Positions 11,146 to 30,485 of a stretch of DNA of 64,000 nt are shown one piece after another. This DNA is from Obrimoposthia wandeli (lineage: Eukaryota): assembly GCA_977020255.1 (NCBI GenBank), contig CDROCS010003444.1:1-64000 (forward strand), written 5' to 3'. The translations under genes and the position numbers were made by a program. The notes beneath the pieces are model-generated. The model was not told the origin of the DNA. It did not search any database and saw only the letters and a program-made list of their open reading frames with translations. Position 1 is the stretch's first letter, and each line of letters starts with the position of its first letter.

Positions 11146-12165
11146 GGCTATTTTCCCGAAAGATAGTGCTATACTGATAATATGATCAGTATAGATAGGG
11201 GTTAATCATGATTACTGCAGAATTCAATAAGCTTTTAAGTGCGCTTACTCAATTAACAGACCTACAAACTAAGAGGCTAGAAAAAGCTTTAAAAAGTGAG
11301 AGTCCAGCTCAAATCATCATCAATATTTTAGAGAAAAGGCTGGTCTCGAATCCAGAATGCCCGCATTGCCATTCAGATCGAATAAAGCGTAATGGAAAGC
11401 TAAATACAATGCAGCGTTATAGATGTAGCACCTGCTCTAAAACATTCAATGCAACGACAAATACACCCTTAGCAAAACTTCATTATAAGGATAAATGGCT
11501 AACTTACTTTTCTTGCATGATTGAAGGCGATGTACTGAGAAAGTCCGCTCTCAAATGTAGCATAAATCTCAAAACATCTTTCAGATGGAGACATCGTCTT
11601 TTAGAGCTGCCTGCTCTTCTTAAGGCCACGTCTTTACAAGGAATTATAGAAATGGATGAAACCTTTTTTCCTTATTCTGAAAAAGGGAGCAGGAGTTTAA
11701 GTAGGCCTGCAAAGCAGCGTGGAGAGAAAGCAAAGAAACGAGGAAGATCCAAGCAAGATTGGGTTGCTGTTATGACTGCACGTGACAGGTCTAAGCATAC
11801 TTATGAAGCGGTATTATCTTCGGTTAGTTCTGCAGAGCTAAACCGAAACCTAAGCGGGAAAATAGAAAAAGACAGTGTGCTGTGTAGCGACGGTTTTAGG
11901 GCATATATTCAAGTAGCTTCGGTCAATAAAATGGAACATAAGCGACTAAATGTATCTGCTGGAATAAGAGTTATCGATAACGTTTTTCATATTCAAAACG
12001 TAAATGCCTATCACCAAAGACTGAAAAGTTGGATCAAGCGTTTTCATGGAGTAGCCACCAAATACCTTGAACACTATTTGGGCTGGTTTAGATTTTAGAC
12101 ACGACAGATAATCCTAATGAAAACAGTCTCTTCGAAGTGCAGCAACACTTAACGGGAACATAGCC
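11146..12165 (+). mobile_element. IS1595-family insertion sequence, 1020 bp, imperfect TIRs, 8-bp TSD AAGGTAAA
   Basis: IRL GGCTATTTTCCCGAAAG; IRR reverse complement GGCTATGTTCCCGTTAAG; AAGGTAAA at 11138-11145 and 12166-12173. Confidence 0.93.
11208..12098 (+). CDS. IS1595-family DDE transposase, probably C-terminally truncated by a frameshift
   Basis: Zn-ribbon CPHC...RYRCSTC, HTH, EMDETFF, SDG, HIQNVNAYHQRLKSWIKRFHGVATKYLEHYLGWF. Confidence 0.9.
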   Translation: MITAEFNKLLSALTQLTDLQTKRLEKALKSESPAQIIINILEKRLVSNPECPHCHSDRIKRNGKLNTMQRYRCSTCSKTFNATTNTPLAKLHYKDKWLTYFSCMIEGDVLRKSALKCSINLKTSFRWRHRLLELPALLKATSLQGIIEMDETFFPYSEKGSRSLSRPAKQRGEKAKKRGRSKQDWVAVMTARDRSKHTYEAVLSSVSSAELNRNLSGKIEKDSVLCSDGFRAYIQVASVNKMEHKRLNVSAGIRVIDNVFHIQNVNAYHQRLKSWIKRFHGVATKYLEHYLGWFRF

Positions 12166-12675: not shown

Positions 12676-12781
12676 GCTTAGATCAGCCTGTAAGTGAATG
12701 TCTAACCATAATTGGCTCATTATCTAAGTAGTATTTATTATGATTCTTTCCACTACTTTCTATTCCATGGAGCAGTTTAAT

Positions 12782-14347: not shown

Positions 14348-14353
14348 TTTATC

Positions 14354-14386
14354 GCGACCTCGTACAACACGAGGTCGCTTTGTTTT
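14354..14386 (+). terminator. Intrinsic terminator after mttB
   Basis: GCGACCTCGT-ACAAC-ACGAGGTCGC followed by TTTGTTTT. Confidence 0.8.
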
Positions 14387-14681
14387 GCTATCTATTTATC
14401 TATGAAACCCATACACATTTTATTTGACTTACATTAATCTGAGTTCGCAGATTCACCATTACTTTGTGCCTAGTATTATCTTAAACTGCCTTTCGCTTAT
14501 TAATCTACGGTAAATTCGCACCTATCAACAAACTGATTTTTTCATCTTCTTTGTGCATATAATGCATAGGGTTTTTTAGAAATCGTGCTATTTTACAAGT
14601 TCTAGATCACTCTGATAAAAACTAAAAAAAACACTATAAATCCTTATCATATTAAGCTATATCAATAGCTTGAGATACGAC

Positions 14682-15668
14682 ATGACAATACAATCTACTA
14701 AATCACCAACACGTTACGGCTTTTTGCTAGTCGATAAATATTCAATGATTGCACTTAGTTCTGCAATTGAACCTTTGCGTATGGCAAACAGACTTTCTAA
14801 ACAAACCCTATATGAATGGCCTGTTTTTACGGTAGATGGACTACCTGTCCCCGCTAGCAACGGGTTAGTCGTTACGCCGGATAGCGCTGTCGATCAGATC
14901 GCTAACTTAGATATTTTATTTATTTGTGCAGGCGTTGATGTATCTGGGGTTTATACTAAAAAGCTGCACTCTACTTTATGCAAACTTGCACTGCAAAAAG
15001 TCAACTTAGGCGGCTTGTGTACGGGTACATATTTACTGGCTCGCGCCGGGTTACTCAATGGCTATAGATGTACTATCCACTGGGAGAATATGGCAAGCTT
15101 ACGTGAAGAGTACAATCAAGTCTCCGTTAGCGATGAGCTTTACGAGATTGACCGAGATCGCTACACCTGTGCCGGTGGCAGCGCCCCGTTAGATATGATG
15201 CTAAAACTCATTAGCGACTCAAATAGTGGTAAGCTTTCTGCCAATATTTCTGAGCAATTTGTTTGCGATAGAATTCGTGGCCGCCACGATAGACAGCGTA
15301 CACCGCTACAACAGCATTTAGGGGCTAGCCAGCCCAAATTAATTGAGGCAATTACCTTAATGGAAGCCAATATTGAGGAGCCGATGAGTATTGACGAACT
15401 GGCCAGCTTAGTAGGTGTCTCTAGAAGACAATTAGAGCGACTATTCCAAAAGTATTTGAGTTGTGTTCCAACAAGATATTATATGGACTTACGTTTGAAT
15501 TGTGCCCGCAGATTATTGCTACAAACCAGCAAATCTGTCATTGATGTATCACTTGCATGTGGTTTTGTTTCCCCGCCACATTTCAGCAAATGCTATCGGG
15601 ATTATTTTGGCATCCCACCTCGAAATGAACGCCAACAAAAACTATCCAATATGGATATAGAGTATTGA
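14682..15668 (+). CDS. GlxA/GbdR-family AraC regulator (DJ-1 domain + HTH)
   Basis: IEPLRMANRLS, GGLCTGTYLLARAGLL, TIHWEN, TCAGG, VSRRQLERLFQKY, SHFSK-like FVSPPHFSKCYR. Confidence 0.9.
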   Translation: MTIQSTKSPTRYGFLLVDKYSMIALSSAIEPLRMANRLSKQTLYEWPVFTVDGLPVPASNGLVVTPDSAVDQIANLDILFICAGVDVSGVYTKKLHSTLCKLALQKVNLGGLCTGTYLLARAGLLNGYRCTIHWENMASLREEYNQVSVSDELYEIDRDRYTCAGGSAPLDMMLKLISDSNSGKLSANISEQFVCDRIRGRHDRQRTPLQQHLGASQPKLIEAITLMEANIEEPMSIDELASLVGVSRRQLERLFQKYLSCVPTRYYMDLRLNCARRLLLQTSKSVIDVSLACGFVSPPHFSKCYRDYFGIPPRNERQQKLSNMDIEY

Positions 15669-15670
15669 TA

Positions 15671-15711
15671 AGTAATAAAAAAGGCGCTAATAAGGCGCCT
15701 TTTTTATTACT
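15671..15711. terminator. Bidirectional intrinsic terminator between convergent genes
   Basis: AGTAATAAAAAAGGCGC-TAATAAG-GCGCCTTTTTTATTACT, a perfect inverted repeat. Confidence 0.85.
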
Positions 15712-15734
15712 CAATACACTCTTAGTATTTCTAC

Positions 15735-17795
15735 TTATGAACTTCTCGATCTCCTTCGGCTCGTGGTACGCCCACCTCGAGGTGCACTACTCACTTCTTT
15801 CCTTGCGGGTAATTGCACCACTTTAGACAGATTAACAAAATCATCTGTCAAATGCGGTAAAGCCATTGCCGCTACAAAGTGATCTTGAAACTTTGCCTCG
15901 GTTGCTGTTTCAATCTTTTCAACTTTATCAATAATATTGGAGATCAGCGTTCGTTTTTCGCGATTCAACAATGCAATACGCGCACCCGTTCCGGCTGCAT
16001 TACCCACCGGGGCCACAAGCGGTAAATCGCAGTCGGGAATAAGCCCTAACACCATCGCATACTTAACATCAATATGACTGCCAAACGCACCCGCCAAGCC
16101 AATACGCCCTACTGTCGCCACTTGCATATGATCCATTAGCAATCGAATGCCTGCATATAGCGCTGCTTTTGCCAGCTGAATAGCACGCACATCATTTTGA
16201 GTGATAGACAGTGTTTTTTCACTTTCATGCAAAACGTAAGTAAAAGTACGGCCATCTGCGACTATTCGCTGACTTTTCTCGGCCATCGCGCCATCAATCA
16301 CACCATCACTATTAATAACGCCGGCTAAAAACAATTCAGCGACTATTTCAATAATACCTGAACCACAAATACCGCTAATCTGCAGCTTCTTAGTTTTCTC
16401 GGAAAAATCTTCATCGTTAGACCAAAGGTCACAGCCAATCACTTTGAATTTAGGTTCAAGGGTGTCTTTATCGATGCGTACACGCTCAACGGCACCTACT
16501 GCTGCGCGTTGGCCACAGCTAATTTGTGCGCCTTCAAATGCCGGCCCTGTTGGGCTAGATGCGGCTAATAAGCGCTCTTTGTTACCTAATACAATTTCGG
16601 CATTGGTGCCAATATCCACCAGCAAAGTGACTTCGTCAGCTTGATCAGGGCGCTCTGCTAAAATCATTCCTGCTGTATCAGCCCCTATATGCCCTGCTAT
16701 ACAAGGTAAAATAAATGCTTTAGCGCTTGGGTGCAGTGCTACATCTAACTGACTCGCTTTTAATGTAATCGCCATATCGGTGGCTAGCGCAAAAGGCGCG
16801 GTGCCCAGTGGCGTCGGGTCAATGCCTAACAATAAATGGTGCATGATAGGGTTGCACACGATGGTCATGTCGATGATATCGGCAATGTCTATTTTGGCTT
16901 TTTTGGCCGCTTCTTTAGCTAATTGATTAAACGCTTGGCGCACCGCGTTAGTCATTTCGACTTCGCCGCCATCATTCATCATCACATAAGAGACACGGCT
17001 CATTAAATCTTCGCCGAATCTTATTTGCGGGTTCATGGCAGCACAAGTTGCTAATACTTTGCCGCTACTAAGCTCGCACAAATGTGCCGCTATTGTGGTT
17101 GAGCCTAAATCGATGGCTAAACCGTATAGGCCAAGTTTAATGCCTGGCCATACTGCAATTATTTCTGCACTGCTCTTTATGTTGCGCTCAGGGCTGCTTG
17201 TGCTGACATCATTATCGTAATAAAGCGCTAGCGTAATCTCGCGACCCGCTTTTGCTAGAGCTGGTTGTAACTGCTGCATTACCGATAGCTCGCAACGACT
17301 ACTGTCTAGGTTATGTTGTTTTAACAACATATCTTGCACTCTCTGAAGATCAGAGGCTGGTTCATCAATGTTTGGCTCATCAACAGTGAAGGTAAACAAT
17401 TTTACATTCGGATCTATCACTAGCTCTAAGGCCGTCGCCTCTTTAACAATGTGCTGTTTATGTAGCTGACTACTCGCCGGAACATCGACAACTAAATCAC
17501 CTAAAATTTGCACATTACAGCTCAGGCGCTTACCCGTGCTTAAGTCTAATTTTCGATTGGTATGCTCAAGTTCACTCGGCACTGACATATTCTCTAATTT
17601 AGAGACAATGCCGTGTTTAGGAAACTCACCGATACTAGGCATAACCTGGCAGCGAGTACATATACCTCGCCCGCCACAGCTTGATTCAAGATCAACCCCT
17701 AATAGCTGCGCAGCTTGTAGCACTGGAGTACCCAATGCAAACTCACCGCGCAAACCACTAGGTGTAAATACTACTGTTGCTTTTTGTGTCATCAT
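15735..17795 (-). CDS. [2Fe-2S]-ASKHA reductive activator of corrinoid enzymes (RACE/RamA-like)
   Basis: CGGRGICTRC and RLSC ferredoxin motifs, IDLGSTT, GEDLMSRV, VDIGTNAEI, GPAFEG, GICGSG, GAFGS, GNAAG. Confidence 0.92.
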   Translation of the reverse strand: MMTQKATVVFTPSGLRGEFALGTPVLQAAQLLGVDLESSCGGRGICTRCQVMPSIGEFPKHGIVSKLENMSVPSELEHTNRKLDLSTGKRLSCNVQILGDLVVDVPASSQLHKQHIVKEATALELVIDPNVKLFTFTVDEPNIDEPASDLQRVQDMLLKQHNLDSSRCELSVMQQLQPALAKAGREITLALYYDNDVSTSSPERNIKSSAEIIAVWPGIKLGLYGLAIDLGSTTIAAHLCELSSGKVLATCAAMNPQIRFGEDLMSRVSYVMMNDGGEVEMTNAVRQAFNQLAKEAAKKAKIDIADIIDMTIVCNPIMHHLLLGIDPTPLGTAPFALATDMAITLKASQLDVALHPSAKAFILPCIAGHIGADTAGMILAERPDQADEVTLLVDIGTNAEIVLGNKERLLAASSPTGPAFEGAQISCGQRAAVGAVERVRIDKDTLEPKFKVIGCDLWSNDEDFSEKTKKLQISGICGSGIIEIVAELFLAGVINSDGVIDGAMAEKSQRIVADGRTFTYVLHESEKTLSITQNDVRAIQLAKAALYAGIRLLMDHMQVATVGRIGLAGAFGSHIDVKYAMVLGLIPDCDLPLVAPVGNAAGTGARIALLNREKRTLISNIIDKVEKIETATEAKFQDHFVAAMALPHLTDDFVNLSKVVQLPARKEVSSAPRGGRTTSRRRSRSS

Positions 17796-17803
17796 TAAAT
17801 CCG

Positions 17804-17893
17804 CTGAATAAGGTTATGAAAGATATCTAATATTATTATTGGCTACCTTTTACGGCACCCTCTGAATAAGGTTATGAAAGATATCTAATATTA
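17804..17893. repeat. Perfect 32-bp direct repeat x2 (17804-17835, 17862-17893) with a 26-bp spacer
   Basis: CTGAATAAGGTTATGAAAGATATCTAATATTA occurs twice; the second copy overlaps the stop codon of the upstream gene. Confidence 0.9.
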
Positions 17894-18787
17894 GGCGCGA
17901 CGTCTGCGCCCACTTCTACCGTTTCTACCTTCGCCTTCCGCTGTTGGCTCACGAAAACGTTTGATCCAATTAGCACAATCTGGATCTCGACCCATCATCA
18001 CATCAGCACCTAGTGTTGCTGCTATTACTTCTGTATGTAATGGATTGGTGATTGCAGAAGTCATACCCGCTGCTATTGCCATACTTAAAAATGCAGCATT
18101 AAAGCCATCTCTGTTAGGTATACCAAAACTGATGTTAGAAGCACCACAAGTGGTATTGACTTTAAGCTCAGTGCGCAAGCGATGTACTAATTTCATCACT
18201 TGAATACCTGAATCATTGATCGCGCCTATAGGCATAACTAAAGGATCAACAACTACATCGCACGCTGGAATACCATAATCTGCTGCGCGCTCTACTATTT
18301 TTTTAGCCACTTCAAAACGCACATTTGGATCTTGTGAGATACCCGTTTCATCGTTTGAAATGGCAACGACTGCAGCACCGTACTTTTTAACTAGTGGTAG
18401 TACGCGCTCCATTTGCTCATCTTCGCCGGTCACTGAATTAACAAGTGCTTTACCTTTATAAACGGACAAACCCACTTCTAAAGCTTCTACAATTGACGAG
18501 TCAATACATAAAGGAATATCGGTAAATGACTGAATAAGCTGAATAACTTCACCCAGTATTCTAGGCTCATCGGCCAGTGGAATACCTGCGTTAACATCGA
18601 GTATGTGTGCACCTGCAGCGATTTGTGCCAGCGCATCCGCTTTAACTCGGCTGTAATCACCTTCTTTCATTTCAGCGGCAAGTAGCTTACGACCCGTCGG
18701 GTTAATGCGCTCGCCAATAATTACAAACGGGCGCTCAAAACCAATCACAGCTTCTTTAGTGGCTGAACTTAAAATTGTATCTGTCAT
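17891..18787 (-). CDS. Pterin-binding methyl-THF:corrinoid methyltransferase (MeTr/MetH folate domain)
   Basis: IIGERINPTGRK, LDVNAG, PLCIDSS, VNSVTGE, VVDPLV, GASNISFGIPNR. Confidence 0.9.
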   Translation of the reverse strand: MTDTILSSATKEAVIGFERPFVIIGERINPTGRKLLAAEMKEGDYSRVKADALAQIAAGAHILDVNAGIPLADEPRILGEVIQLIQSFTDIPLCIDSSIVEALEVGLSVYKGKALVNSVTGEDEQMERVLPLVKKYGAAVVAISNDETGISQDPNVRFEVAKKIVERAADYGIPACDVVVDPLVMPIGAINDSGIQVMKLVHRLRTELKVNTTCGASNISFGIPNRDGFNAAFLSMAIAAGMTSAITNPLHTEVIAATLGADVMMGRDPDCANWIKRFREPTAEGEGRNGRSGRRRRA

Positions 18788-19803
18788 TTTGCTGTACTCT
18801 CTGTCAACAGTTGCTCATCGCGTCCCGGGTACCACGGGGTTCTTCCCTGTAGTACACCCGAGCGTTTAATTATGTCACCTACCGCATCTTCTTGGCGGTA
18901 TGCCATGACGTGTATGCCACTAACTCCTTCAATTTCACTGAGTTCTTGAATCAGCTCAACACAAAGCTCTTGGCTTTCTTTCTTTTGATCTTTAGCACCT
19001 GCTAAGCGTGCAATGACCGAATCCGGGATATGTATACCGGGCACATTATTGCGTATCCATGTAGCCGTTTTTGCGGATGCCATCGGCCCAACACCTGGCA
19101 ATACAAATACCTTTTCTAACAAACCTAAATCTCTCGACTTTGCCATAAACTCTTTAAAACGCGGCACATCAAAACAATAATTGGTTTGCACAAACTGTGC
19201 CCCCGCAGCTATTTTTTTAGCTAAGCGGTAAGGTCTAAAATCATGTGGTGGTGCAAAAGGGTTGGATGCTGCACCTAAAAAAACTGTAGGTGGATCAGTG
19301 ATTTTACGGCCGCTTAAAAACTGACCTTTATCGCGCATGCCTCTTATCGTTTCTAAAAGTGACATACAATCTAAATCAAATACAGGTTTGGCTTGTGGGT
19401 GATCGCCCGCCTGCACCCCATCTCCTGTTAGGCACAACATGTTAGTAACACCCATCGCTGCACCACCTAGCACATCACCTTGAATAGCAATGCGGTTTTT
19501 GTCACGACAAGAGATTTGCATAATAGGTGCATAACCAACACGGGTTAACAATGCACACATACTCACGCTTGACATATGACAGTTAGCGCCAGAGCCATCT
19601 GTGGCATTCATGCCGTCAACAAACCCATCGAACACACGAGCTCTGTCATATACATCTTGTGGGTTTGCTGAATCAGGTGGTGCGAGCTCGGATGTCACAG
19701 CAAAGTGACCGGCACGCAACACACGCTCTAATCTTCCAGCTGATGTATGCCCTTCTAATATAGGTAGCTTTTCGCCTGGGATAGGCTCATCCGTAAATAT
19801 CAT
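18784..19803 (-). CDS. metF: Methylenetetrahydrofolate reductase
   Basis: TSELAPP, NATDGS, QISCRDKNR, LCLTGD, KKIAAGAQFVQT, GIHVM. Confidence 0.88.
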   Translation of the reverse strand: MIFTDEPIPGEKLPILEGHTSAGRLERVLRAGHFAVTSELAPPDSANPQDVYDRARVFDGFVDGMNATDGSGANCHMSSVSMCALLTRVGYAPIMQISCRDKNRIAIQGDVLGGAAMGVTNMLCLTGDGVQAGDHPQAKPVFDLDCMSLLETIRGMRDKGQFLSGRKITDPPTVFLGAASNPFAPPHDFRPYRLAKKIAAGAQFVQTNYCFDVPRFKEFMAKSRDLGLLEKVFVLPGVGPMASAKTATWIRNNVPGIHIPDSVIARLAGAKDQKKESQELCVELIQELSEIEGVSGIHVMAYRQEDAVGDIIKRSGVLQGRTPWYPGRDEQLLTESTAK

Positions 19804-20282
19804 TTTTGTTTAGGCTCTTGTTGTGTAGGCTCATATTGCTGAACTATTTCGTTTATTTTACGCAACCAAGAAGAACTACCTTGCTGTGAGTGATCAACAG
19901 GGATTTGCACGATATTAATACGATCGCCTGAATTCATACTTTGGCTACCTCGCCAAGCCTCCATCCATACACAACGCATTTCAGGCTTTACTTCACAATG
20001 GCCATTTTGACGCACACCGCCACAAGGCCCGTTACGCAAATTTTTTGGGCAGTTCATAGAACATGACATACCCGTTGAGCTTAACGCGCACTGCCCACAC
20101 ATTTTGCAATCGAATAATAAGCCTTTACACCATTGCTCTACTTTTGCGACAGGCTTTTCTAAACGCTCGAAGCCAATTTTAGCTAATAGCGGATGTATTT
20201 TAATTAACACTTTTTCAAACGTGTTGTACAAGCATTCAAAAATATTTGAATGTGTAACCGCCCACTGACGCACCTTTAACAT
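19800..20282 (-). CDS. MetV-like / MTHFR C-terminal Cys-rich protein
   Basis: CKMCGQC, CSMNCPK, NGPCGG, CEV, CVW; stop overlaps the metF start. Confidence 0.8.
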   Translation of the reverse strand: MLKVRQWAVTHSNIFECLYNTFEKVLIKIHPLLAKIGFERLEKPVAKVEQWCKGLLFDCKMCGQCALSSTGMSCSMNCPKNLRNGPCGGVRQNGHCEVKPEMRCVWMEAWRGSQSMNSGDRINIVQIPVDHSQQGSSSWLRKINEIVQQYEPTQQEPKQK

Positions 20283-20468
20283 TTATATCTCCAACCCAGT
20301 TCTTTGTCACTAGTATCTTAGAGAAGATGTTAAAAAGCGGCGGCCACTTTTTAGTAGTCACCCGTTTATATATCATGTTCAGCTAAGATAATTCTGCGTT
20401 CTAGTCTCGATGCTTTCATGCTTCCTACTTTGTGCTAAGTAAAAGGCTTAAGACGTACTTAAGGAAAG

Positions 20469-21176
20469 CTATACAAGCTGAACGGCTATTTTATTATTAA
20501 ATTCGGCCAAAGGTCTCGATAGTCCGTTGGTGCCGGTATATTGGTACTCATATTCAAGATTTAAACGCCTAGCTGCAATCATCGCAGCAGCTTGAAGCTT
20601 TTCATCTTCACACTGTGACAAATACATCAACTTTCGATAGTTGCCAAAGTATAAAGATAATAATTCTGGCTTTTGATCAATGCCTAAACCACGAATGATT
20701 AAACGTTCAAAATGTCGTACTAGAAAATCAGTTAAATAAAAGGTACCCAATTCGGCTTCTTGCAATTGCTCAAACTGCTCGCTACCTGCGTAGAATTCAT
20801 AGCAATGTGCCCCCGCAATTCGTTCTACCTGCTCTTCTTCAATCAAGGTATCGAGCAACCCTCCAGTACCACAATCGGCAAACGCTACAAAGATCTGCTG
20901 CTGCTTTGCCTTTGCAATATCAATTAGCACTTTTACTTCTCCCGTAATGCGTTGAGGATAGTTATGTACTTCAGCGCTAATACACTGGACATCAAGGTGC
21001 ATCCAATTATTGGCTTTACATACGCTTAAGATATCGCGCATTAAAGCAGAACAACAAATGATAACGGCGCTCGCATTTTCATTTTTGGTAGATGAGTTAA
21101 CTACAGCTGATGATTTAATTACTTTAGTTTGCGTAGCGGCTATTGATTCAAGCCTTTTAGCTCTTCCTCTACGCAT
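20469..21176 (-). CDS. DUF1638 domain protein (corrinoid reactivation-associated)
   Basis: AEVHNYPQRI, ADCGTGG, AHCYEFYAG, GTFYLTDFL, YFGNYRKLMYL. Confidence 0.8.
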   Translation of the reverse strand: MRRGRAKRLESIAATQTKVIKSSAVVNSSTKNENASAVIICCSALMRDILSVCKANNWMHLDVQCISAEVHNYPQRITGEVKVLIDIAKAKQQQIFVAFADCGTGGLLDTLIEEEQVERIAGAHCYEFYAGSEQFEQLQEAELGTFYLTDFLVRHFERLIIRGLGIDQKPELLSLYFGNYRKLMYLSQCEDEKLQAAAMIAARRLNLEYEYQYTGTNGLSRPLAEFNNKIAVQLV

Positions 21177-21256
21177 TTAAATCACCTGCAGTTTTTTGCA
21201 ATTACAATATTTTCACAATTGTGATAACCAATTTTCAACCGCTACTCGGCTAATAC

Positions 21257-21955
21257 TTAAGCTGCTCGCTTTTGCTTTATCATCTCTAATGCCATATCAA
21301 CTGCAATGGCTGCATCACGACAATAACCATCAGCGCCTACTGCATCACCAAATTCTTGGTTAAGTGGTGCTCCGCCTACTAATACAATGTAATCATCACG
21401 AATACCTTGCTCTTTCATGGTATCGATCACAACTTTCATATAAGGCATGGTAGTGGTTAGCAGTGCAGACATACCTAATATATCCGGCTTGTGCTCTTCT
21501 AAGGCTTCTAAGTACTTTTCAACGGGAATATTAATACCTAGATCGATCACTTCAAGTCCAGCGCCCTCCATCATCATGCCTACCAAGTTTTTACCGATGT
21601 CATGAATATCGCCTTTAACGGTTCCGATCACCATTTTTCCGACTGATTCAACACCTGTTTCAGCCAGTAATGGCCGTAGGATAGCCATGCCGCCTTTCAT
21701 TGCGCCCGCTGCGCTGAGCACTTCAGGTACGAATAAAATTCCATCACGAAAATCAACACCGACAATTGCCATTCCTCCAACGAGAGCATCATTTAACACT
21801 CTATCAGGCGCCCAACCGCGCGCTAGCAATATGTTAGTGCCCTCAGAAACTTCTTCTGCCATACCGTCGTAGAGATCGTCGTGCATCTGCTCTACAAGTT
21901 CGTCATCATTCAGGGTTGATAAATCTAGTTCATCATCAAAATTTTCTTCAGACAT
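21257..21955 (-). CDS. Stand-alone corrinoid (B12-binding) protein
   Basis: Cap domain ILFVPEVL plus GTVKGDIHDIGKNLV (DxHxxG) and SALLTTTM, VLVGGAPL. Confidence 0.93.
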   Translation of the reverse strand: MSEENFDDELDLSTLNDDELVEQMHDDLYDGMAEEVSEGTNILLARGWAPDRVLNDALVGGMAIVGVDFRDGILFVPEVLSAAGAMKGGMAILRPLLAETGVESVGKMVIGTVKGDIHDIGKNLVGMMMEGAGLEVIDLGINIPVEKYLEALEEHKPDILGMSALLTTTMPYMKVVIDTMKEQGIRDDYIVLVGGAPLNQEFGDAVGADGYCRDAAIAVDMALEMIKQKRAA

Positions 21956-22493: not shown

Positions 22494-23594
22494 TTACGCT
22501 GCGCTAGTTAACATACGAATTTTACTATCTACCTCACCATGATCGATATAGTACCCGCGCAGATGCCTGTCACCAGTGGTGGGATCAAAAGCTGAGCGCC
22601 CATGTAACACACGCCCATTGTCAAATATCATCATCTCCCCAGCCTGTAACTTTAACTGCAAAGCGTATTGAGGGGAGCGAATACGACGCATTAAATCTTG
22701 ATACGCACGGTAAAAGTCGATATTTTGACCATCAATTAAGTTTGCGCTTTCAGCCAGATGGGCATTGAAAATAAAATTATTAATCACGCCATTCTCTTCA
22801 CTAATCGATGCATGCTTATAACGAATATCACAATTGCTATCATGAAACCTAAACGGCATTTTCTGTTGACATAAACGTAGGTAATTATCTGAATTTTGAC
22901 TACGTAGGTCTTCAGCAATCGCAAAACCATCTGCCAATAATGACTCTCCGCCTTGCGCATCATTTTTAATGCAGTGCAAAAATTGATACCCAGGTGGTAA
23001 TTGCTGGTTGGTAAGATCAGTGTGCAAAGGCAGTTCTACTGCGGTATATGCTAAATTGTTTGGATCCGCTTTATTAATAACTTCAAACATAACCCCAAAG
23101 TTCGTTTCACGTTTAAAGCCAATCAAATCACCAAATTGCTCACCGCTGAGCTCTCCTTGCAATTCATTAATAATAACTAAACCATCACGCTTCAAAGCAC
23201 TTAACATCTCTTTAAGTTGCGCCGGATTTTCTTCATCAAATTTATTAGCACTAAAGCGCTGTATATCAAAATCACCTTCCCAACGAGCATAGCTTATTTC
23301 TGCTGGATCTTGCAGCTGACAACCCACAGCATAGCTAGCTAATAGTTTAGCGGAAAATACTGAGCGCTCAATTTCACCTGGCCACTGCAAAGATATATGC
23401 TCTTTTGTATACTCTATATCCGTTGGAATAATTTCAATTGACACTTTTGTTAGATCAAATAAGCGCTCTGCAGTTTGCGGATGGAACCCTAAAGGATCGA
23501 TATCACGCAACCAAATAAATGGGAATTTAGATTGGCTGCTATCAGCCCAAGTGAGATCAATTGTAGCGTTGGTAACATTTATAGCTTTTATCAT
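22494..23594 (-). CDS. Gamma-butyrobetaine hydroxylase-like Fe(II)/2-oxoglutarate dioxygenase (TauD family)
   Basis: N-terminal WLRD segment, NNLAYT, LHTDL (HxD), QFLHC, SLLADGF, FDNGRVLHGR, RHLRGYY. Confidence 0.85.
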   Translation of the reverse strand: MIKAINVTNATIDLTWADSSQSKFPFIWLRDIDPLGFHPQTAERLFDLTKVSIEIIPTDIEYTKEHISLQWPGEIERSVFSAKLLASYAVGCQLQDPAEISYARWEGDFDIQRFSANKFDEENPAQLKEMLSALKRDGLVIINELQGELSGEQFGDLIGFKRETNFGVMFEVINKADPNNLAYTAVELPLHTDLTNQQLPPGYQFLHCIKNDAQGGESLLADGFAIAEDLRSQNSDNYLRLCQQKMPFRFHDSNCDIRYKHASISEENGVINNFIFNAHLAESANLIDGQNIDFYRAYQDLMRRIRSPQYALQLKLQAGEMMIFDNGRVLHGRSAFDPTTGDRHLRGYYIDHGEVDSKIRMLTSAA

Positions 23595-26308: not shown

Positions 26309-29281
26309 ATGGTTTCTATACAACAACTAAATACAGCACGTAATACAGCAATCGCCGCAACTAGCACCGGTGCTCCCAAGGCGACCTCTAACCAGTTTTT
26401 TGGTGTCGGCCCCATCACTGATATGACTCTAAACGAGGTAGACGCTAGATTATTGCGTTTTGAATTTGATGCTTGGATAGAAGCTAACTACCCAAAACTT
26501 GATGATCAAGGCAATAAAATTGGTCAATTTACCACTGCTGAAATTGGCCGTGGTATGCACCGTGGCTATCCTGCTGATAAAGTATTAAATGACATGATGC
26601 GTGAAATGCACCGTTATTTTGCTTTTCCTAAAAGCAATAAAATGGCGGTGGGCTTGGGCGGTGGGCACAGTGGTTTTACCGCCGCAGCCCTGCATATGAT
26701 GAATGCAAATAACAGTGAACAGATTGTATTTGTTGATACACCTAAGCCTGAATCTGAAGCAGCTAAAGCCGGAGGCTTCTTTCGCCAATCTTGGGGAACG
26801 CAATTAACTGAATTACAACGCTATGCAACTAACGGTGATGAAAGCCGCTTAATCTTTGCAGAAGGCGAAGGCGCTATTCCAAGTGCTGATTTTTTAGTAT
26901 CTAAAGGTGTTAAATTATTCTTTGGTGTAGGCCATGAAACAACAGGGGCTACCACTTACACAAGCGAGGAAATAACTAACTTATTAGCTTGGATTGATTT
27001 AAACCCCGGCGAACACCATGCAGTAATTGATGCAACTTCCTTATTAGGCGCGATGCCTTGGCCACAAACGCTGGTTGAGCAGATGCTGGCTAAGTGCACC
27101 ATGTTTATGCCTTTCCAAAAGGCTATTGGCGGTATTTCAGGCTACTACGTCATTTCTTTAACACCCCAAGCGCTTAACTTAATTGATGAAAACCAAAAAG
27201 ATCCTTCATGGGCTATCCCTAGGCAATTAAAAATTGCTGTATCTGTTGATGGCACTTTACCGCTAAGCTCAGCAAAAAGTACTGCACTGGGGCCAATTTA
27301 CGACCCTCAAACAGATAAAATGCTCGGTGGTATCATCAACACTTACAGCACTTTGGCGTTTGCAGAAACAACTTTTGGTATTTTACGTAATGAAAGAAAC
27401 ATTGGTGATGTAACCACGCTTAACGAACGCTCAAGCACTAACCGCAATATCGTCAATACATGGGTTGCTAACAATCCACTATTTGAGCTAGGCGTTGCTA
27501 ATGAAGATGCACGTGGTGCTGCTGTTACGTTATTAAAGGTAACTGATAGCGACATTACTGATGATGCTGTTCACCAGCGCATCGTAGCTAAATCTAAGCA
27601 GTTACTAGGTTATGATGGTATTACTCATGCTGATGGCTGCCACGAAAAAGGCCTAGATGTAGCACGTTATGTTAATGCTTTCCCAGGCTCTCCCGGTGAT
27701 TATCGCGCATGGATTGGTGGTATTCGCCCACAAGTTGATATTACATCCCTTCTGGATAATGTTAACTACTGCTACTTGCGCGCAAAAATTGCCGTGCTAG
27801 AAGAGCTATTAACCGATGCTGGTGAAAGTTTTGACAGCGCTGTTAATACCACTAGTACTGATGAAGCTCGCGTGGATGATTCACAACGTGCTTATAAAGT
27901 ATTGATCGCAGATTTAGTCGGCATGGTCTTTGATGTAAATGGCGAAGCCGATTGCTCTAGCGTTAAGCAACATGTTGAAAGCAAAGGCGGTGTTTTTCAC
28001 AATCAAGCCCTCAACGATGACGCAAAACTAGCTGCTGGCATGCATTTCTTTTATCAACCGCACTTAAGCCGTGAAGATGAGTTGTTAGCACAAACTGAGC
28101 AAGGACAATACGATGCAACCATCGTAGCTGCTACCTTCTTGCCTAAAACGGCTAAGTTTGAATTTGGCGGTGTACGCATTGGTGCTGGCACTGGCAACAT
28201 GGGCGCAGATAGCTGGGGCGGAGGTAACGGCACTGGCGGTATTGCACCTTTAATGAATACACCTAGTTTTAATTCAAGAGCGACTGCACAAACCGCTTTT
28301 AAAGCATTACTTAAAGTACTACCCGATTTACAAGTACAAGCAATGCACGATTTAGTGGTTGCTGGTGATTTCGATACAGGCAAAAATCTTGCACAATTCC
28401 CGACCACTAAACTTGAGGGCAAGAAGATAGCCATCATTGGTTTTGGCAATATTGGTCGTGAAGTGGCTAAATTAGCCGCAGCATTTGGCATGCGCGTCAG
28501 TGTTTATGCTAGAGCAAAACACCAGGTTTGGATTGAATCTGAAGGCTTTGAATATGCATCTTCTATCGTTGCAGCTGCTAAAGATGCCGATGTTATTAGC
28601 CCGCACACTGGCCTTGGCGCATTAGATGCTACAACGGGTATTTTCAGCAATGCTAATATCATCAATAGTGAAGTTTTCTCTGCAATGAACCAAGCTGCAA
28701 TACTGGTTAACTATGATCGCGGTGAAGTGGTTGATATAAACGCTTTAGATGCAGCGCTAAGCAGCGGCCAAATTCGTTACGCAGCGATTGATGCCGATTT
28801 GTTTAAAGATCCGACGAGCGGTGAATTATCAGGCCCTATGGTTCCTTACCGTAATATTGAGCCTAAGCACGTTGGAAAAATGGAGTTATTACCCCATGCA
28901 GCGGCCGATACTGAGCATATGTCTCGTGTTGAAGGCGCTAAGCAAGCGGTTGATCAGATTTTCGATGTTATCCAATATCGCAAGGTAACTAACCTTAAAG
29001 GTGATTTACCTGCAGGTTATGAAGATGATGGTGCTAAAACAGTTAATGGTGTTGGTAAAGTCAATGCTGCTAACTTACAGGGTTTAGATGATGCACAGCT
29101 TCAACAACTAAGCGAAAGCGCACAATATGTGGCTGCTTTTTGGGGAGCGGTTAACGCAACTCAAGATCCGCAACGTAAAGCGCAATTAATTGCTCAATAT
29201 AGTGAACAGCTAGTGCTTCAATCTAATATTTATGCAACGCTTATGCAAAAGAATGGCCTGCAAGGTCCTTTAGCTGAATAA
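26309..29281 (+). CDS. Fusion of a class-V PLP aminotransferase (SerC-like) and a D-2-hydroxyacid dehydrogenase
   Basis: N-terminal half: GLGGGHSGF, VIDATSLLG, MPFQKAIGG (PLP Lys), GDYRAW. C-terminal half: IIGFGNIGREVA, VNYDRGEVVD, LLPHAAA. Single uninterrupted ORF. Confidence 0.85.
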   Translation: MVSIQQLNTARNTAIAATSTGAPKATSNQFFGVGPITDMTLNEVDARLLRFEFDAWIEANYPKLDDQGNKIGQFTTAEIGRGMHRGYPADKVLNDMMREMHRYFAFPKSNKMAVGLGGGHSGFTAAALHMMNANNSEQIVFVDTPKPESEAAKAGGFFRQSWGTQLTELQRYATNGDESRLIFAEGEGAIPSADFLVSKGVKLFFGVGHETTGATTYTSEEITNLLAWIDLNPGEHHAVIDATSLLGAMPWPQTLVEQMLAKCTMFMPFQKAIGGISGYYVISLTPQALNLIDENQKDPSWAIPRQLKIAVSVDGTLPLSSAKSTALGPIYDPQTDKMLGGIINTYSTLAFAETTFGILRNERNIGDVTTLNERSSTNRNIVNTWVANNPLFELGVANEDARGAAVTLLKVTDSDITDDAVHQRIVAKSKQLLGYDGITHADGCHEKGLDVARYVNAFPGSPGDYRAWIGGIRPQVDITSLLDNVNYCYLRAKIAVLEELLTDAGESFDSAVNTTSTDEARVDDSQRAYKVLIADLVGMVFDVNGEADCSSVKQHVESKGGVFHNQALNDDAKLAAGMHFFYQPHLSREDELLAQTEQGQYDATIVAATFLPKTAKFEFGGVRIGAGTGNMGADSWGGGNGTGGIAPLMNTPSFNSRATAQTAFKALLKVLPDLQVQAMHDLVVAGDFDTGKNLAQFPTTKLEGKKIAIIGFGNIGREVAKLAAAFGMRVSVYARAKHQVWIESEGFEYASSIVAAAKDADVISPHTGLGALDATTGIFSNANIINSEVFSAMNQAAILVNYDRGEVVDINALDAALSSGQIRYAAIDADLFKDPTSGELSGPMVPYRNIEPKHVGKMELLPHAAADTEHMSRVEGAKQAVDQIFDVIQYRKVTNLKGDLPAGYEDDGAKTVNGVGKVNAANLQGLDDAQLQQLSESAQYVAAFWGAVNATQDPQRKAQLIAQYSEQLVLQSNIYATLMQKNGLQGPLAE

Positions 29282-29327
29282 CTAACGACATAATTATTCA
29301 ACTATTTTACTATTCAAGGAATACAGC

Positions 29328-30485
29328 GTGAAAGATCAGATCAAACAGCAGTTAATTACTATTTTTGATGCCGCCGTGCAAGACGTCGCAGGCTTTAATG
29401 CTTGTTATAAAAGCGTGAAGCAAGGCGCATTAGCGAATACTAATTTTCAGCCTGATCAGATCATCGCTGTGGGCAAAGCAGCTAGCGGCATGTGCGCAGG
29501 CGTGCTTTGCGCACTTGAAGAATCTAGCTCCAAAGCTCTTTGCCCTGCTCTAGTTGTAACTAAGTATCAACATACAGACCCACAACTGGCCCAGTACAAA
29601 AATGTAACAGTGATAGAATCAGCTCATCCTGTGCCTGATGACAACTCGCTATTGGCAGGACAAACATTGCTCGACACTGTGCAATCGCTTCCTGAAAATA
29701 GCCAGTTACTAGTGTTAGTGTCAGGTGGTGCTTCATCATTGGCTGAGTCATTACCTGAGCAAACAAGCTTAGAACAGTGGCAGCAACTAACCAATAGCAT
29801 GTTATCTAGTGGCTATAATATTGGCCAAATCAATACTGTAAGAAAACAAACGTCCCTTATTAAAGATGGCAAATTACTTGCTAATTTTAAAGGCAGTGCC
29901 GTACAAGTCTTAGCCATATCTGATGTTGAAGGCGATGACATAAGTGTGATTGGCTCAGGCATTGGCGATACGAAAAGACTCAACTGTGACGCTAATATCC
30001 ACTTGATTGCAACTAACCAAGTGGCTAGAGATGCAGCCCAACGCTGCGCTATTGATGCAGGTTTCTCTGTTATTAGTAACACTGAAACAATGTATAAAGA
30101 TGTGCAGCAAGTCTCTTCAGATATAGCCGGTTGCCTGCTAAATGCCCAAGCGGGGGTTTATATTTTTGGCGGAGAACCGACCGTTGTTTTACCAGAGAAT
30201 CCTGGTAGTGGTGGGCGCAATCAAAGCTTAGCACTTTCTTTAGCTATCGCTATTGAAGGCACTGATAACATTCATGTTCTCGTTGCTGGCACCGATGGCA
30301 GCGATGGCCCGACCGATGCTGCCGGCGGCATTATTAACGGCCATACGATCACTGACTTTAACAAAGCTGAAGAATATTTAAAGTCCGCAGATGCTGGAAG
30401 TTTATTACGCGAGCTTCAGGCAATTTTTATCACAGGACCAACCAATACCAACGTGATGGATTTAGTCATTGCTATTATTGAATAA
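29328..30485 (+). CDS. Glycerate 2-kinase (class II, DUF4147/MOFRL; GckA/TtuD type)
   Basis: AVGKAA, HPVPD, VSGGASSL, ISDVEGDD..VIGSG, GGEPTV, GGRNQ, GTDGSDGPT, TGPTNTNVMD. Confidence 0.9.
   Translation: MKDQIKQQLITIFDAAVQDVAGFNACYKSVKQGALANTNFQPDQIIAVGKAASGMCAGVLCALEESSSKALCPALVVTKYQHTDPQLAQYKNVTVIESAHPVPDDNSLLAGQTLLDTVQSLPENSQLLVLVSGGASSLAESLPEQTSLEQWQQLTNSMLSSGYNIGQINTVRKQTSLIKDGKLLANFKGSAVQVLAISDVEGDDISVIGSGIGDTKRLNCDANIHLIATNQVARDAAQRCAIDAGFSVISNTETMYKDVQQVSSDIAGCLLNAQAGVYIFGGEPTVVLPENPGSGGRNQSLALSLAIAIEGTDNIHVLVAGTDGSDGPTDAAGGIINGHTITDFNKAEEYLKSADAGSLLRELQAIFITGPTNTNVMDLVIAIIE

What the first reader, a model, noticed from the sequence alone, without database searches (positions are those of the whole stretch)
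26309..30485. 990-aa aminotransferase/hydroxyacid-dehydrogenase fusion in an operon with glycerate 2-kinase
Seen: a class-V PLP domain with the FQK lysine motif fused to a D-2-hydroxyacid dehydrogenase, followed 46 bp later by a MOFRL glycerate kinase. An annotation pipeline might call this SerC-SerA. However, the kinase uses free glycerate, and the Rossmann beta-B ends in YAR rather than the acidic YDP, which suggests NADPH and the reductive direction. Inference: serine to hydroxypyruvate to D-glycerate to 2-phosphoglycerate, the Sga/Hpr/Gck steps of the serine cycle, with unstable hydroxypyruvate channelled within one polypeptide. I do not know of a characterised enzyme with this architecture.
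Basis: partly seen in the sequence, partly recalled or inferred. Interest (0 to 1): 0.85.

Follow-up and report, generated by a model that had tools for sequence, protein, structure and literature searches.

The report
Uncharacterised aminotransferase-reductase fusion beside glycerate kinase
A 990-residue protein joins a phosphoserine-aminotransferase-like domain to an NADPH-type 2-hydroxyacid reductase and sits in front of a glycerate kinase; it belongs to a widespread, untested family that most likely turns serine into glycerate and then 2-phosphoglycerate.

Summary
ORF 26309-29281 (+) encodes 990 aa, and a DUF4147/MOFRL glycerate-2-kinase homologue starts 46 bp downstream behind a Shine-Dalgarno site.

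What the fusion is:
- The N-terminal 520 aa is a divergent phosphoserine aminotransferase (PSAT)-clade PLP domain. PLP Lys271, Asp241, Trp162, Arg466 and His84-Arg85 are conserved. The second His-Arg phosphate clamp is not.
- The C-terminal part is a D-2-hydroxyacid dehydrogenase. It has invariant Arg804/His863 and an invariant A-R-x-x-H loop where NAD+-dependent SerA/PdxB carry Asp.
- The family holds at least 698 proteins, all about 990 aa, in at least 524 species of Alpha- and Gammaproteobacteria.

Evidence on its role:
- It is not the housekeeping SerC/SerA. Five genomes that carry it also encode canonical SerC, SerA and serine dehydratase.
- The kinase is adjacent only in one clade of the family tree (15 of 21 assessable loci) and never in the other (0 of 42).
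- Still, 47 of 50 carrier genomes have some glycerate kinase.

Best reading (about 0.45): serine to hydroxypyruvate to D-glycerate to 2-phosphoglycerate. The substrate and the idea of channelling are both untested. I found no paper on this architecture. I rate it a new variant of a known kind, of moderate interest.

The scan had already noted the adjacent betaine C1 module on this same DNA.

The parts
26309..29281 (+). 990-aa fusion ORF: PSAT-like aminotransferase domain, D-2-hydroxyacid dehydrogenase domain and a C-terminal helical tail
26309..27868 (+). N-terminal PLP domain (aa 1-520). Fold-type I, PSAT clade, with about 160 extra residues as insertions
   Evidence: NCBIfam NF002841 5e-14. 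hhalign against alpha-type SerC: probability 98.9%, 381 columns. AF2 model pLDDT 92.9. Best folds are M. tuberculosis PSAT 3vom/2fyf, TM 0.81-0.82.
27119..27121 (+). Codon of Lys271 in PFQKAIGG, the predicted PLP Schiff-base lysine
   Evidence: Aligns with E. coli SerC K198. Invariant across fusions, stand-alone relatives and canonical PSATs.
26558..26563 (+). Codons of His84-Arg85 (MHRG). They correspond to the SHR motif that binds the phosphate of phosphoserine and the gamma-carboxylate of glutamate in PSAT
   Evidence: Aligns with E. coli SerC H41-R42. Their role in AtPSAT1 (H110/R111) is described in PMC6043687.
27890..28993 (+). D-2-hydroxyacid dehydrogenase domain (about aa 528-895) with invariant Arg804 and His863
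   Evidence: Pfam PF02826 5e-29. hhalign against SerA: probability 98.7%. Foldseek matches CtBP, D-LDH and PGDH about equally, E ~1e-17. Invariant columns.
28505..28522 (+). Beta-B/alpha-D loop Y733-A-R-A-K-H738. A734, R735 and H738 are invariant and there is no Asp, which predicts a preference for NADP(H)
   Evidence: rule for cofactor specificity from PMC6303947
28202..28243 (+). Glycine-rich loop (aa 632-645, invariant W636 G637 G638 G639 G641 G643 G644). It replaces a helix of canonical 2HADH substrate-binding domains and its role is unknown
   Evidence: modelled at pLDDT 40-47
28994..29281 (+). C-terminal extension of about 95 aa, predicted as two long helices. No family match
29282..29327 (+). 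46-bp spacer with the Shine-Dalgarno sequence AAGGA at 29316-29320 and no terminator-like site
29328..30485 (+). 385-aa DUF4147/MOFRL kinase, a homologue of glycerate 2-kinase. It belongs to the 'short' subtype (376-389 aa) that is always the copy next to the fusion

Best explanation
The two genes form a small operon that converts L-serine to 2-phosphoglycerate.

The N-terminal PLP domain transaminates serine to hydroxypyruvate. Because the domain derives from PSATs, the acceptor is probably 2-oxoglutarate. The C-terminal 2-hydroxyacid dehydrogenase domain reduces hydroxypyruvate to D-glycerate, probably with NADPH. The MOFRL kinase then phosphorylates D-glycerate to 2-phosphoglycerate.

This would be a non-orthologous equivalent of the Sga/HprA/GckA branch of the serine cycle, built from a PSAT-type rather than an AGT-type aminotransferase. 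In this lineage it lies next to a corrinoid-dependent quaternary-amine demethylation cluster, which produces C1 units and glycine, that is, serine.

Shown: the domain identities, intact catalytic residues, the NADPH-type loop, the operon layout, the clade-wide kinase linkage, and independence from housekeeping SerA/SerC.

Inferred: the substrates, the direction of the reaction, the amino acceptor, and any channelling.
For: 1. The only recurrent neighbour in 80 loci is the MOFRL kinase. It is always immediately downstream on the same strand, in 15 loci with otherwise different flanks: Marinomonas, Nitrincolaceae, Aliikangiella and one alphaproteobacterium. A second bacterium in the same assembly has the same pair.
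2. The kinase matches T. maritima glycerate kinase 2B8N end to end at 3e-57.
3. 44 of 50 carrier genomes have a MOFRL gene, against 51 of 101 sampled Alphaproteobacteria. The three Nitrincolaceae/Osedax-symbiont carriers without MOFRL have a PF02595 glycerate kinase instead, while the window's closest relative has MOFRL and no PF02595.
4. [quoted passage not shown] According to PMC6303947, Asp marks the NAD+-dependent dehydrogenases SERA and PDXB, and its absence marks NADPH-preferring 2-keto-acid reductases.
5. Canonical SerC and SerA are present in all 5 carrier genomes tested.
6. The second PSAT phosphate clamp (E. coli H328-R329) aligns with Val455-Asn456, so the distal pocket has been remodelled.
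7. Context: a GbdR-like regulator, an MttB methyltransferase, a corrinoid protein, RACo and MTHFR lie upstream. In the Osedax-symbiont loci a PurU-like gene lies downstream. In Pseudomonas and Vibrio betaine clusters the comparable position is held by glyA1 and sdaB, which remove glycine through serine (PMC12093977).
Against: - The aminotransferase is closest to genuine phosphoserine aminotransferases in sequence, language-model features and fold. It keeps His84-Arg85, Trp162 and Arg466, which bind phosphoserine in AtPSAT1.
- The dehydrogenase domain scores equally against PGDH and glyoxylate reductase models: 78.6 and 80 bits, both far below their cut-offs.
- The kinase is not adjacent in 48 of 63 assessable loci, and never in the larger clade. 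There the gene stands alone among unrelated neighbours.
- Glycerate kinases are common anyway, so co-occurrence is weak evidence and is not corrected for phylogeny or genome size.
- The carriers also have serine dehydratase.
- One stand-alone relative of the N-domain lies just upstream of a serA gene.
- There are no expression or biochemical data.
Confidence: 0.45

Rival explanations
1. The fusion is a second enzyme pair of the SerC/SerA type that works on phosphorylated substrates (phosphoserine, 3-phosphohydroxypyruvate, 3-phosphoglycerate). It could be an unregulated, NADP-linked bypass of serine biosynthesis or a route for phosphoserine breakdown. On this view the adjacent kinase is only loosely related.
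For: - PSATs are the nearest family by sequence, features and fold.
- His84-Arg85, Trp162 and Arg466 are conserved.
- Arg623 aligns with the GRAG arginine of type-I PGDH.
- A stand-alone N-domain relative lies upstream of a 380-aa gene and serA.
- Some databases already call members 'phosphoglycerate dehydrogenase'.
Against: - All carriers tested already have canonical SerC and SerA.
- There is no ACT or ASB regulatory domain.
- The Asp that marks NAD+-dependent SERA enzymes is invariably absent.
- The position aligned with the Arg of SerA's I-R-S-A-T motif is Val/Ala.
- The second His-Arg phosphate clamp is lost.
- A pathway on phosphorylated substrates gives no reason for a conserved co-transcribed glycerate kinase.
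Confidence: 0.2
2. The enzyme acts on a different amino acid and 2-oxo acid pair with an anionic or polar side chain. Candidates include cysteate/sulfopyruvate/sulfolactate, phosphonoalanine/phosphonopyruvate, aspartate, or glutamate/2-oxoglutarate giving D-2-hydroxyglutarate. The short MOFRL paralogue might then phosphorylate a hydroxy acid other than glycerate.
For: - Half of the anion pocket is retained and the other half remodelled.
- There is an unusual invariant glycine-rich loop in the substrate domain of the dehydrogenase.
- The kinase next to the fusion is a distinct short subtype that coexists with a normal long MOFRL in Marinomonas and in L072.
- In L072 a PhnD-type (Phosphonate-bd) ABC transporter follows the pair on the same strand.
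- Most carriers show no kinase linkage at all.
Against: - MOFRL proteins are known only as glycerate 2-kinases (my own knowledge of the family).
- A PF02595 glycerate kinase replaces MOFRL in three carrier genomes.
- The L072 transporter is a single case, separated by a 228-bp gap.
- No sulfonate or phosphonate genes recur near the fusion.
Confidence: 0.2
3. The fusion runs in the biosynthetic direction, D-glycerate to hydroxypyruvate to serine. This would be a non-phosphorylated serine pathway, with the aminotransferase pulling an unfavourable oxidation.
For: - The same chemistry can be read backwards.
- Fusing the two enzymes would help pull an unfavourable oxidation, which is the logic suggested by the stramenopile PGDH-PSAT fusions (PMC5715807).
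- In Alphaproteobacteria the gene stands alone in housekeeping-type surroundings.
Against: - The NADPH-type cofactor loop argues for reduction. Almost all 2HADH enzymes that work as dehydrogenases use NAD+.
- A co-transcribed glycerate kinase would compete for the substrate.
- Canonical serine biosynthesis is present.
Confidence: 0.1

Closest known systems
Phosphoserine aminotransferase of the SerC_2 / PRK03080 type (e.g. M. tuberculosis SerC, PDB 2FYF/3VOM)
   Same: - Fold-type I, class-V PLP fold.
- Best structural match, TM 0.81-0.82.
- hhalign probability 98.9% over the whole SerC length.
- Conserved PLP Lys, Asp, stacking Trp, Asn-Thr, carboxylate Arg and the N-terminal His-Arg.
   Different: - About 160 extra residues, and only 15-25% identity.
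- 52 bits against a 477-bit cut-off.
- Pfam Aminotran_5 does not match.
- The second His-Arg phosphate clamp is not conserved.
- Fused to a dehydrogenase.
- The genomes keep a separate canonical SerC.
Glyoxylate/hydroxypyruvate reductases (GHRA/GHRB/GHRC subfamilies of D-2-hydroxyacid dehydrogenases, e.g. E. coli GhrA/GhrB, M. extorquens HprA)
   Same: - 2HADH fold with the catalytic Arg and His.
[quoted passage not shown] The basic A-R-x-x-H pattern resembles the GHRA NADPH fingerprint [ST]R[ST]x[RK].
- The proposed reaction is the HprA step of the serine cycle.
   Different: - Scores are far below every equivalog cut-off: 80 against 455, and 55 against 492.
- It is equally distant from PGDH, CtBP and D-LDH.
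- The GxGxDNxD motif is altered to GAGTGNMG and followed by a glycine-rich loop.
- The canonical Glu partner of the catalytic His is not clearly conserved.
- It carries a 95-aa helical tail.
PGDH-PSAT fusion proteins of oomycetes, brown algae and Thecamonas
   Same: A 2HADH-family dehydrogenase and a PSAT-family aminotransferase for consecutive steps sit in one polypeptide (PMC5715807, PMC2705460).
   Different: - The domain order is opposite there (PGDH at the N-terminus, PSAT at the C-terminus).
- They are eukaryotic and mitochondrial, built from canonical SerA/SerC-type domains, and assigned to serine biosynthesis.
- The fusion here is bacterial, highly divergent, has an NADPH-type loop and coexists with canonical SerA/SerC.
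Serine-cycle branch Sga-HprA-GckA of methylotrophs
   Same: The proposed sequence of reactions is the same, and it includes a MOFRL-type glycerate 2-kinase that yields 2-phosphoglycerate.
   Different: - The aminotransferase is PSAT-derived rather than AGT/SGAT-type.
- Two of the three activities are fused.
- The hosts are marine heterotrophs rather than classical methylotrophs.
- No other serine-cycle genes were seen nearby.

Membership tests
Phosphoserine aminotransferase (SerC, EC 2.6.1.52) | Fold-type I class-V PLP fold with the Schiff-base Lys, Asp to the pyridine N, a stacking Trp, and an Arg for the alpha-carboxylate | tested here: met
   K271, D241, W162 and R466 align with E. coli K198, D174, W102 and R335. 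K271, D241 and R466 are invariant across the superfamily alignment. Fold match TM 0.81-0.82.
Phosphoserine aminotransferase (SerC, EC 2.6.1.52) | Both halves of the phosphate clamp: His-Arg in the N-terminal loop and His-Arg in the beta13-beta14 loop (AtPSAT1 H110/R111 and H396/R397) | tested here: not met
   The first pair is conserved (H84-R85). The second aligns with V455-N456, with invariant R453 two residues upstream and a 4-residue insertion. The loop alignment is uncertain.
Phosphoserine aminotransferase (SerC, EC 2.6.1.52) | Score above the curated NCBIfam equivalog cut-off, and the only such gene in the genome | tested here: not met
   52 bits against 477 (NF002841) and 40 against 448 (TIGR01365). 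Canonical SerC is present in 5 of 5 carrier genomes.
D-3-phosphoglycerate dehydrogenase (SerA) | 2HADH fold with the catalytic Arg and His | tested here: met
   R804 and H863 are invariant. hhalign against SerA gives probability 98.7%.
D-3-phosphoglycerate dehydrogenase (SerA) | [quoted passage not shown] | tested here: not met
   [YH]-A-R-x-x-H in 18 of 18 sequences. The rule comes from PMC6303947.
D-3-phosphoglycerate dehydrogenase (SerA) | Phosphate-binding arginines of the substrate domain (the I-R-S-A-T and G-R-A-G motifs), regulatory ACT/ASB domains, and the equivalog score | tested here: not met
   The Arg of SerA's I-R-S-A-T motif aligns with Val606 (Val or Ala across the family). The Arg of the G-R-A-G motif aligns with invariant Arg623. 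No ACT domain. 78.6 bits against 454. Assigning these two arginines to phosphate binding rests on my memory of the PHGDH literature.
Glyoxylate/hydroxypyruvate reductase (GHRA/GHRB/GHRC) | NADPH-type beta-B/alpha-D loop without Asp | tested here: met
   A734-R735-x-x-H738 is invariant, similar to [ST]R[ST]x[RK].
Glyoxylate/hydroxypyruvate reductase (GHRA/GHRB/GHRC) | Equivalog-level sequence score, and the subfamily's substrate-pocket tryptophans | tested here: not met
   80 bits against 455 (NF009714), 55 against 492 (GhrB) and 26 against 403 (GhrA). Pocket residues could not be mapped without model coordinates.
Glyoxylate/hydroxypyruvate reductase (GHRA/GHRB/GHRC) | Reduces hydroxypyruvate to D-glycerate | not testable with these tools
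   Needs an enzyme assay.
MOFRL glycerate 2-kinase (GckA/TtuD/TM1585) | DUF4147 N-terminal domain plus MOFRL C-terminal domain, homologous end to end to a solved glycerate kinase | tested here: met
   161.5 and 105.7 bits, both above their cut-offs. 2B8N at 3e-57 over residues 34-384. The archaeal equivalog cut-offs are not reached: 172 against 550.
MOFRL glycerate 2-kinase (GckA/TtuD/TM1585) | Phosphorylates D-glycerate at C2 | not testable with these tools
   Indirect support only: a PF02595 glycerate kinase takes its place in three carrier genomes.
Serine-glyoxylate / alanine-glyoxylate aminotransferase (Sga/AGT) | Membership of the AGT branch of class V (matches Pfam Aminotran_5; closest folds are AGT/SPT) | tested here: not met
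   No PF00266 match. AGT/SPT structures rank below PSATs, with TM 0.63-0.74 and higher rmsd.

The most novel reading that the evidence does not exclude
A family found in more than 500 species of marine and soil Proteobacteria is a previously unrecognised bifunctional serine:2-oxo-acid aminotransferase / NADPH hydroxypyruvate reductase. It evolved from a phosphoserine aminotransferase whose phosphate pocket was remodelled to accept unphosphorylated serine. With a dedicated short MOFRL kinase it forms a portable two-gene 'serine to 2-phosphoglycerate' module. Heterotrophs could use it to assimilate C1/C2-derived serine, for example from glycine betaine and other methylated amines, into phosphoenolpyruvate without losing carbon through pyruvate.
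Probability: 0.35. Interest if true: 0.65.

Novelty: new variant of a known kind. Interest (0 to 1): 0.55.

Why it matters
If the proposed function holds, annotation pipelines that now call these proteins 'NAD(P)-dependent oxidoreductase' or 'phosphoglycerate dehydrogenase' miss a serine-assimilation route in hundreds of species. These include symbionts of marine animals and common seawater and soil taxa.

It would also be a clear case of a phosphoserine aminotransferase scaffold recruited to a non-phosphorylated substrate, and a bacterial counterpart, in reverse domain order, of the eukaryotic PGDH-PSAT fusions.

For carbon-cycle models, it would link the breakdown of methylated osmolytes (betaine-type compounds) to gluconeogenic carbon through a serine-cycle-like branch.

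The family is very strongly conserved: about 65% identity between Alpha- and Gammaproteobacteria over 990 residues, with about 270 invariant positions in 18 diverse members. The protein should be easy to express and assay.

Tried and rejected
- Pfam on the isolated N-terminal half found no aminotransferase family, even at E = 10.
- A narrow family profile against PDB sequences found no PSAT. Global hhalign against gamma-type SerC alone failed; the alpha-type and mixed SerC profiles worked.
- Rfam found no riboswitch or other RNA in the window, and the promoter/terminator scan was no better than its shuffles.
- De novo clustering of neighbours in 80 loci found no conserved partner apart from the kinase. 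Amidase, arginase, FAA hydrolase and a sigma/anti-sigma pair each recur only within narrow lineages.
- Contexts of stand-alone N-domain relatives and of the divergent fusions were mostly too short to be informative.
- I found no public RNA run holding this stretch, so expression and co-transcription could not be checked and read laying was not used.
- Literature searches for this architecture, and the 2HADH classification paper, returned nothing on an aminotransferase fusion. A search for E. coli PSAT residue numbers found nothing.
- Absence of serine dehydratase as an argument: rejected, since all five genomes have it.
- 'The own genome lacks SerA/SerC': not testable. G000 is a 1.35-Gb mixed assembly, so carrier genomes reached through loci were used instead.
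- A dehydrogenase-domain tree with named references, and complex prediction on the two domains: considered and not run, because neither would settle the substrate.
- Sequence and fold comparison of the dehydrogenase domain does not separate PGDH from glyoxylate reductase or CtBP.

Full report
**1. Observation**

The window holds a 990-codon ORF at 26309-29281 (+). It is followed after 46 bp by a 385-codon ORF at 29328-30485 (+). The spacer carries AAGGA 7 nt before the GTG start and no terminator-like hairpin.

Pfam finds only 2-Hacid_dh_C (residues 676-829, 5e-29) in the long protein. In the second protein it finds DUF4147 plus MOFRL. The second protein matches the T. maritima glycerate kinase structure 2B8N over its full length at 3e-57.

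**2. The N-terminal domain**

Pfam's class-V model does not see it, even at E = 10. NCBIfam phosphoserine transaminase models do, weakly: NF002841 at 5e-14 and TIGR01365 at 3e-10, both far below their cut-offs.

A profile of 18 family members aligns with alpha-type SerC over the whole SerC length: hhalign probability 98.9%, E = 3e-16, 381 columns. An AlphaFold2 model of residues 1-520 is confident (pLDDT 92.9, pTM 0.90). Its best PDB matches are phosphoserine aminotransferases, led by M. tuberculosis 3VOM/2FYF at TM 0.81-0.82. AGT and serine-pyruvate aminotransferases rank lower. Language-model features agree with this.

Mapping onto E. coli SerC:

| E. coli SerC | Fusion | Conserved? |
|---|---|---|
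| H41-R42 | H84-R85 | yes |
| W102 | W162 | yes |
| T153 | T211 | yes |
| D174 | D241 | yes |
| Q197-K198 | Q270-K271 | yes |
| N239-T240 | N344-T345 | yes |
| R335 | R466 | yes |
| H328-R329 | V455-N456 | no |

In the Arabidopsis PSAT-phosphoserine complex, the phosphate is held by exactly these two His-Arg pairs, and the carboxylate by the equivalents of R335 and W102 (PMC6043687). So the catalytic machinery is intact. Half of the distal anion pocket is kept and the other half is remodelled. This fits a change of substrate. It also fits continued use of glutamate/2-oxoglutarate, which occupies the same pocket. It does not decide between serine and phosphoserine.

**3. The C-terminal domain**

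It is a D-2-hydroxyacid dehydrogenase with invariant Arg804 and His863. By sequence and by fold it is about equally distant from PGDH, glyoxylate reductase, CtBP and D-LDH, so it forms a subfamily of its own.

[quoted passage not shown] The 2HADH classification paper states three relevant points (PMC6303947):
- SERA, PDXB, CTBP, FDH and LDHD carry a conserved Asp in this loop, which goes with a preference for NADH.
- Nearly all members that work physiologically as dehydrogenases use NAD+.
- The NADPH fingerprint of GHRA is [ST]R[ST]x[RK].

This supports a reductase that uses NADPH.

Against SerA, the Arg of SerA's I-R-S-A-T motif aligns with Val/Ala, while the Arg of the G-R-A-G motif aligns with invariant Arg623. 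There is no ACT domain.

Three features are unusual:
- The GxGxDNxD motif reads GAGTGNMG and is followed by an invariant glycine-rich loop (W636-G644). The model is poor there (pLDDT about 40-47).
- There is an insertion after D828-A-D830.
- There is a 95-residue helical tail.

**4. Distribution**

The family is tight and widespread. At least 698 proteins in the 5.8-billion-protein set are about 990 aa long, and the best 120 are 63-97% identical. At least 524 GTDB species encode it, in Alpha- and Gammaproteobacteria. Source names include 'NAD(P)-dependent oxidoreductase', 'phosphoglycerate dehydrogenase' and 'lactate dehydrogenase-like 2-hydroxyacid dehydrogenase/phosphoserine aminotransferase'.

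A profile search of 1.84 billion cluster representatives found only 110 hits. They fall into four groups:
- the main cluster;
- two divergent fusions (952 and 990 aa);
- a handful of stand-alone N-domain relatives of 512-610 aa with no Pfam match;
- canonical PSATs, at E about 1e-5.

**5. Not the housekeeping enzymes**

The window's assembly is a 1.35-Gb mixture, so I used five carrier genomes reached through loci: a 97%-identical Oceanospirillaceae MAG, Marinomonas gallaica, a Nitrincola chromosome, Labrys sp. KNU-23 and Kiloniella laminariae.

All five have a canonical SerC and a canonical SerA above the NCBIfam cut-offs. In the two alphaproteobacteria these lie next to each other as serC-serA. 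All five also have L-serine dehydratase and a MOFRL gene.

**6. Gene neighbourhood**

In 80 loci with 10-kb flanks, the only recurrent neighbour is the MOFRL kinase. It occurs in 15 loci, always immediately downstream on the same strand, while the outer flanks differ between genera. A second bacterium in the same assembly has the same ABC-F / fusion / kinase arrangement, with a fusion 81% identical and a kinase 62% identical.

On a maximum-likelihood tree of the fusions, the linkage is confined to one clade: Oceanospirillaceae, Aliikangiella and a few alphaproteobacteria. There it is seen in 15 of 21 assessable loci, and the pattern needs 3 changes on the tree. In the other clade (Thiotrichales and most alphaproteobacteria) it is seen in 0 of 42. 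In that clade the gene stands alone among unrelated neighbours.

At genome level:
- 44 of 50 carriers have a MOFRL gene, against 51 of 101 sampled Alphaproteobacteria. This is not corrected for phylogeny or genome size.
- The three MOFRL-less Nitrincolaceae/Osedax-symbiont carriers have a PF02595 glycerate kinase instead, whereas the window's closest relative has none. This either/or pattern fits glycerate kinase being the needed activity.
- The copies next to the fusion are a distinct short subtype (376-389 aa). In several genomes they coexist with a longer MOFRL of 420-450 aa.

**7. Wider context in this lineage**

Upstream, divergently transcribed and separated in this window by an ABC-F gene, lie:
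- a GBBH/TmpA-like dioxygenase;
- a corrinoid protein, DUF1638, MTHFR with its C-terminal partner, a pterin-binding methyltransferase and RACo;
- a GbdR-like regulator (463 bits against a 480-bit cut-off);
- an MttB-family methyltransferase.

The same upstream genes flank the fusion in the Osedax-symbiont and Nitrincolaceae loci, where a PurU-like gene lies downstream. In Pseudomonas and Vibrio betaine clusters, glyA1, purU and sdaB dispose of the glycine and C1 units through serine (PMC12093977). A serine-consuming enzyme at this position is therefore plausible, but this argument covers only a few close relatives.

**8. Interpretation**

The best-supported reading is serine to hydroxypyruvate to D-glycerate to 2-phosphoglycerate, with the first two steps on one polypeptide.

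Shown: the domain identities, intact catalytic residues, the NADPH-type loop, the operon layout, clade-wide linkage to the kinase, and redundancy with SerA/SerC.

Inferred: the substrate, the amino acceptor, the direction, and channelling.

The main rivals are:
- activity on the phosphorylated pair;
- a different anionic amino or oxo acid. One alphaproteobacterial locus has a PhnD-type transporter after the pair, and the short kinase is a paralogue of a normal one;
- the biosynthetic direction.

**9. Comparison with known systems and novelty**

PGDH-PSAT fusions are known in oomycetes, brown algae and Thecamonas. They have the opposite domain order, use canonical domains and serve serine biosynthesis (PMC5715807, PMC2705460).

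I found no paper on a PSAT-like/2HADH fusion in bacteria. The library is incomplete, so this is not proof of absence.

I rate it a new variant of a known kind: known folds and known chemistry in an uncharacterised, widespread architecture whose physiological role is open.

Noticed in passing
window 12740-21955: A cluster for corrinoid-dependent methyl transfer from a quaternary amine to folate: an MttB-family methyltransferase (761 bits), a GbdR-like AraC/DJ-1 regulator (463 bits against a 480-bit cut-off), a RACo activase, a pterin-binding methyltransferase, MTHFR with its C-terminal partner, DUF1638 and a B12-binding protein. The host appears to be an aerobic member of the Oceanospirillaceae.
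   Followed up: partly
window 22494-23594 (-): A TauD-family dioxygenase with a GBBH-like N-terminal domain. It scores below the cut-off against both gamma-butyrobetaine dioxygenase (251 of 415 bits) and the TMAEP dioxygenase TmpA (229 of 400), so its trimethylammonium substrate is open. It is transcribed divergently from the fusion in the related Osedax-symbiont loci L003, L008 and L013.
   Followed up: partly
G000:C5776 (L103, L105): The assembly is a 1.35-Gb mixture of 6912 contigs. A second, related bacterium in it carries the same ABC-F / fusion / short-MOFRL arrangement. Its proteins are 84%, 81% and 62% identical to those of the window, so the kinase evolves much faster than the fusion.
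   Followed up: yes
L099:4069-4350 and L100:4285-4575: The two most divergent fusions (P0131 of 990 aa and P0128 of 952 aa) are each followed, within 4-16 bp, by a homologous ORF of about 95 aa (35% identity, no Pfam match). This ORF is absent from the main family's loci.
   Followed up: partly
P0133, P0137, P0148, P0169, P0181, P0190, P0200, P0210: Stand-alone relatives of the N-terminal domain (512-610 aa, no Pfam match) exist in metagenomes. One of them, P0137, lies directly upstream, on the same strand, of a 380-aa gene without a Pfam match (possibly serC) and a canonical serA.
   Followed up: partly
L072:14376-17860: In a Candidatus Poriferihabitaceae genome, the fusion-kinase pair is followed on the same strand by a PhnD-type (Phosphonate-bd) binding protein, an ABC ATPase and two permeases. 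This is a single case, after a 228-bp gap.
   Followed up: no
window 28202-28243 (aa 632-645): An invariant glycine-rich loop (W-G-G-G-N-G-x-G-G) replaces a helix in the substrate-binding domain of the dehydrogenase. The structure model is poor there. Its function is unknown.
   Followed up: no
genomes G009, G011, G015, G050: MOFRL kinases fall into two size classes. The short class (376-389 aa, 100-110 bits) is the one next to the fusion. The long class (420-450 aa, 130-141 bits) lies elsewhere in the genome. Several genomes have both.
   Followed up: partly
window 11208-12098 (+): An ISXO2/IS1595-type transposase ORF lies just upstream of the MttB gene. In L010 another transposase (DDE_Tnp_1_4) sits directly upstream of the fusion.
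   Followed up: no
L092/L006: 14321-14611 and 16389-16661: In Marinomonas foliarum, a 97-aa ORF just after the kinase is repeated 2 kb downstream at 97% identity, inside or next to a radical-SAM gene region. A 56%-identical copy occurs in a Cocleimonas locus (L023).
   Followed up: no
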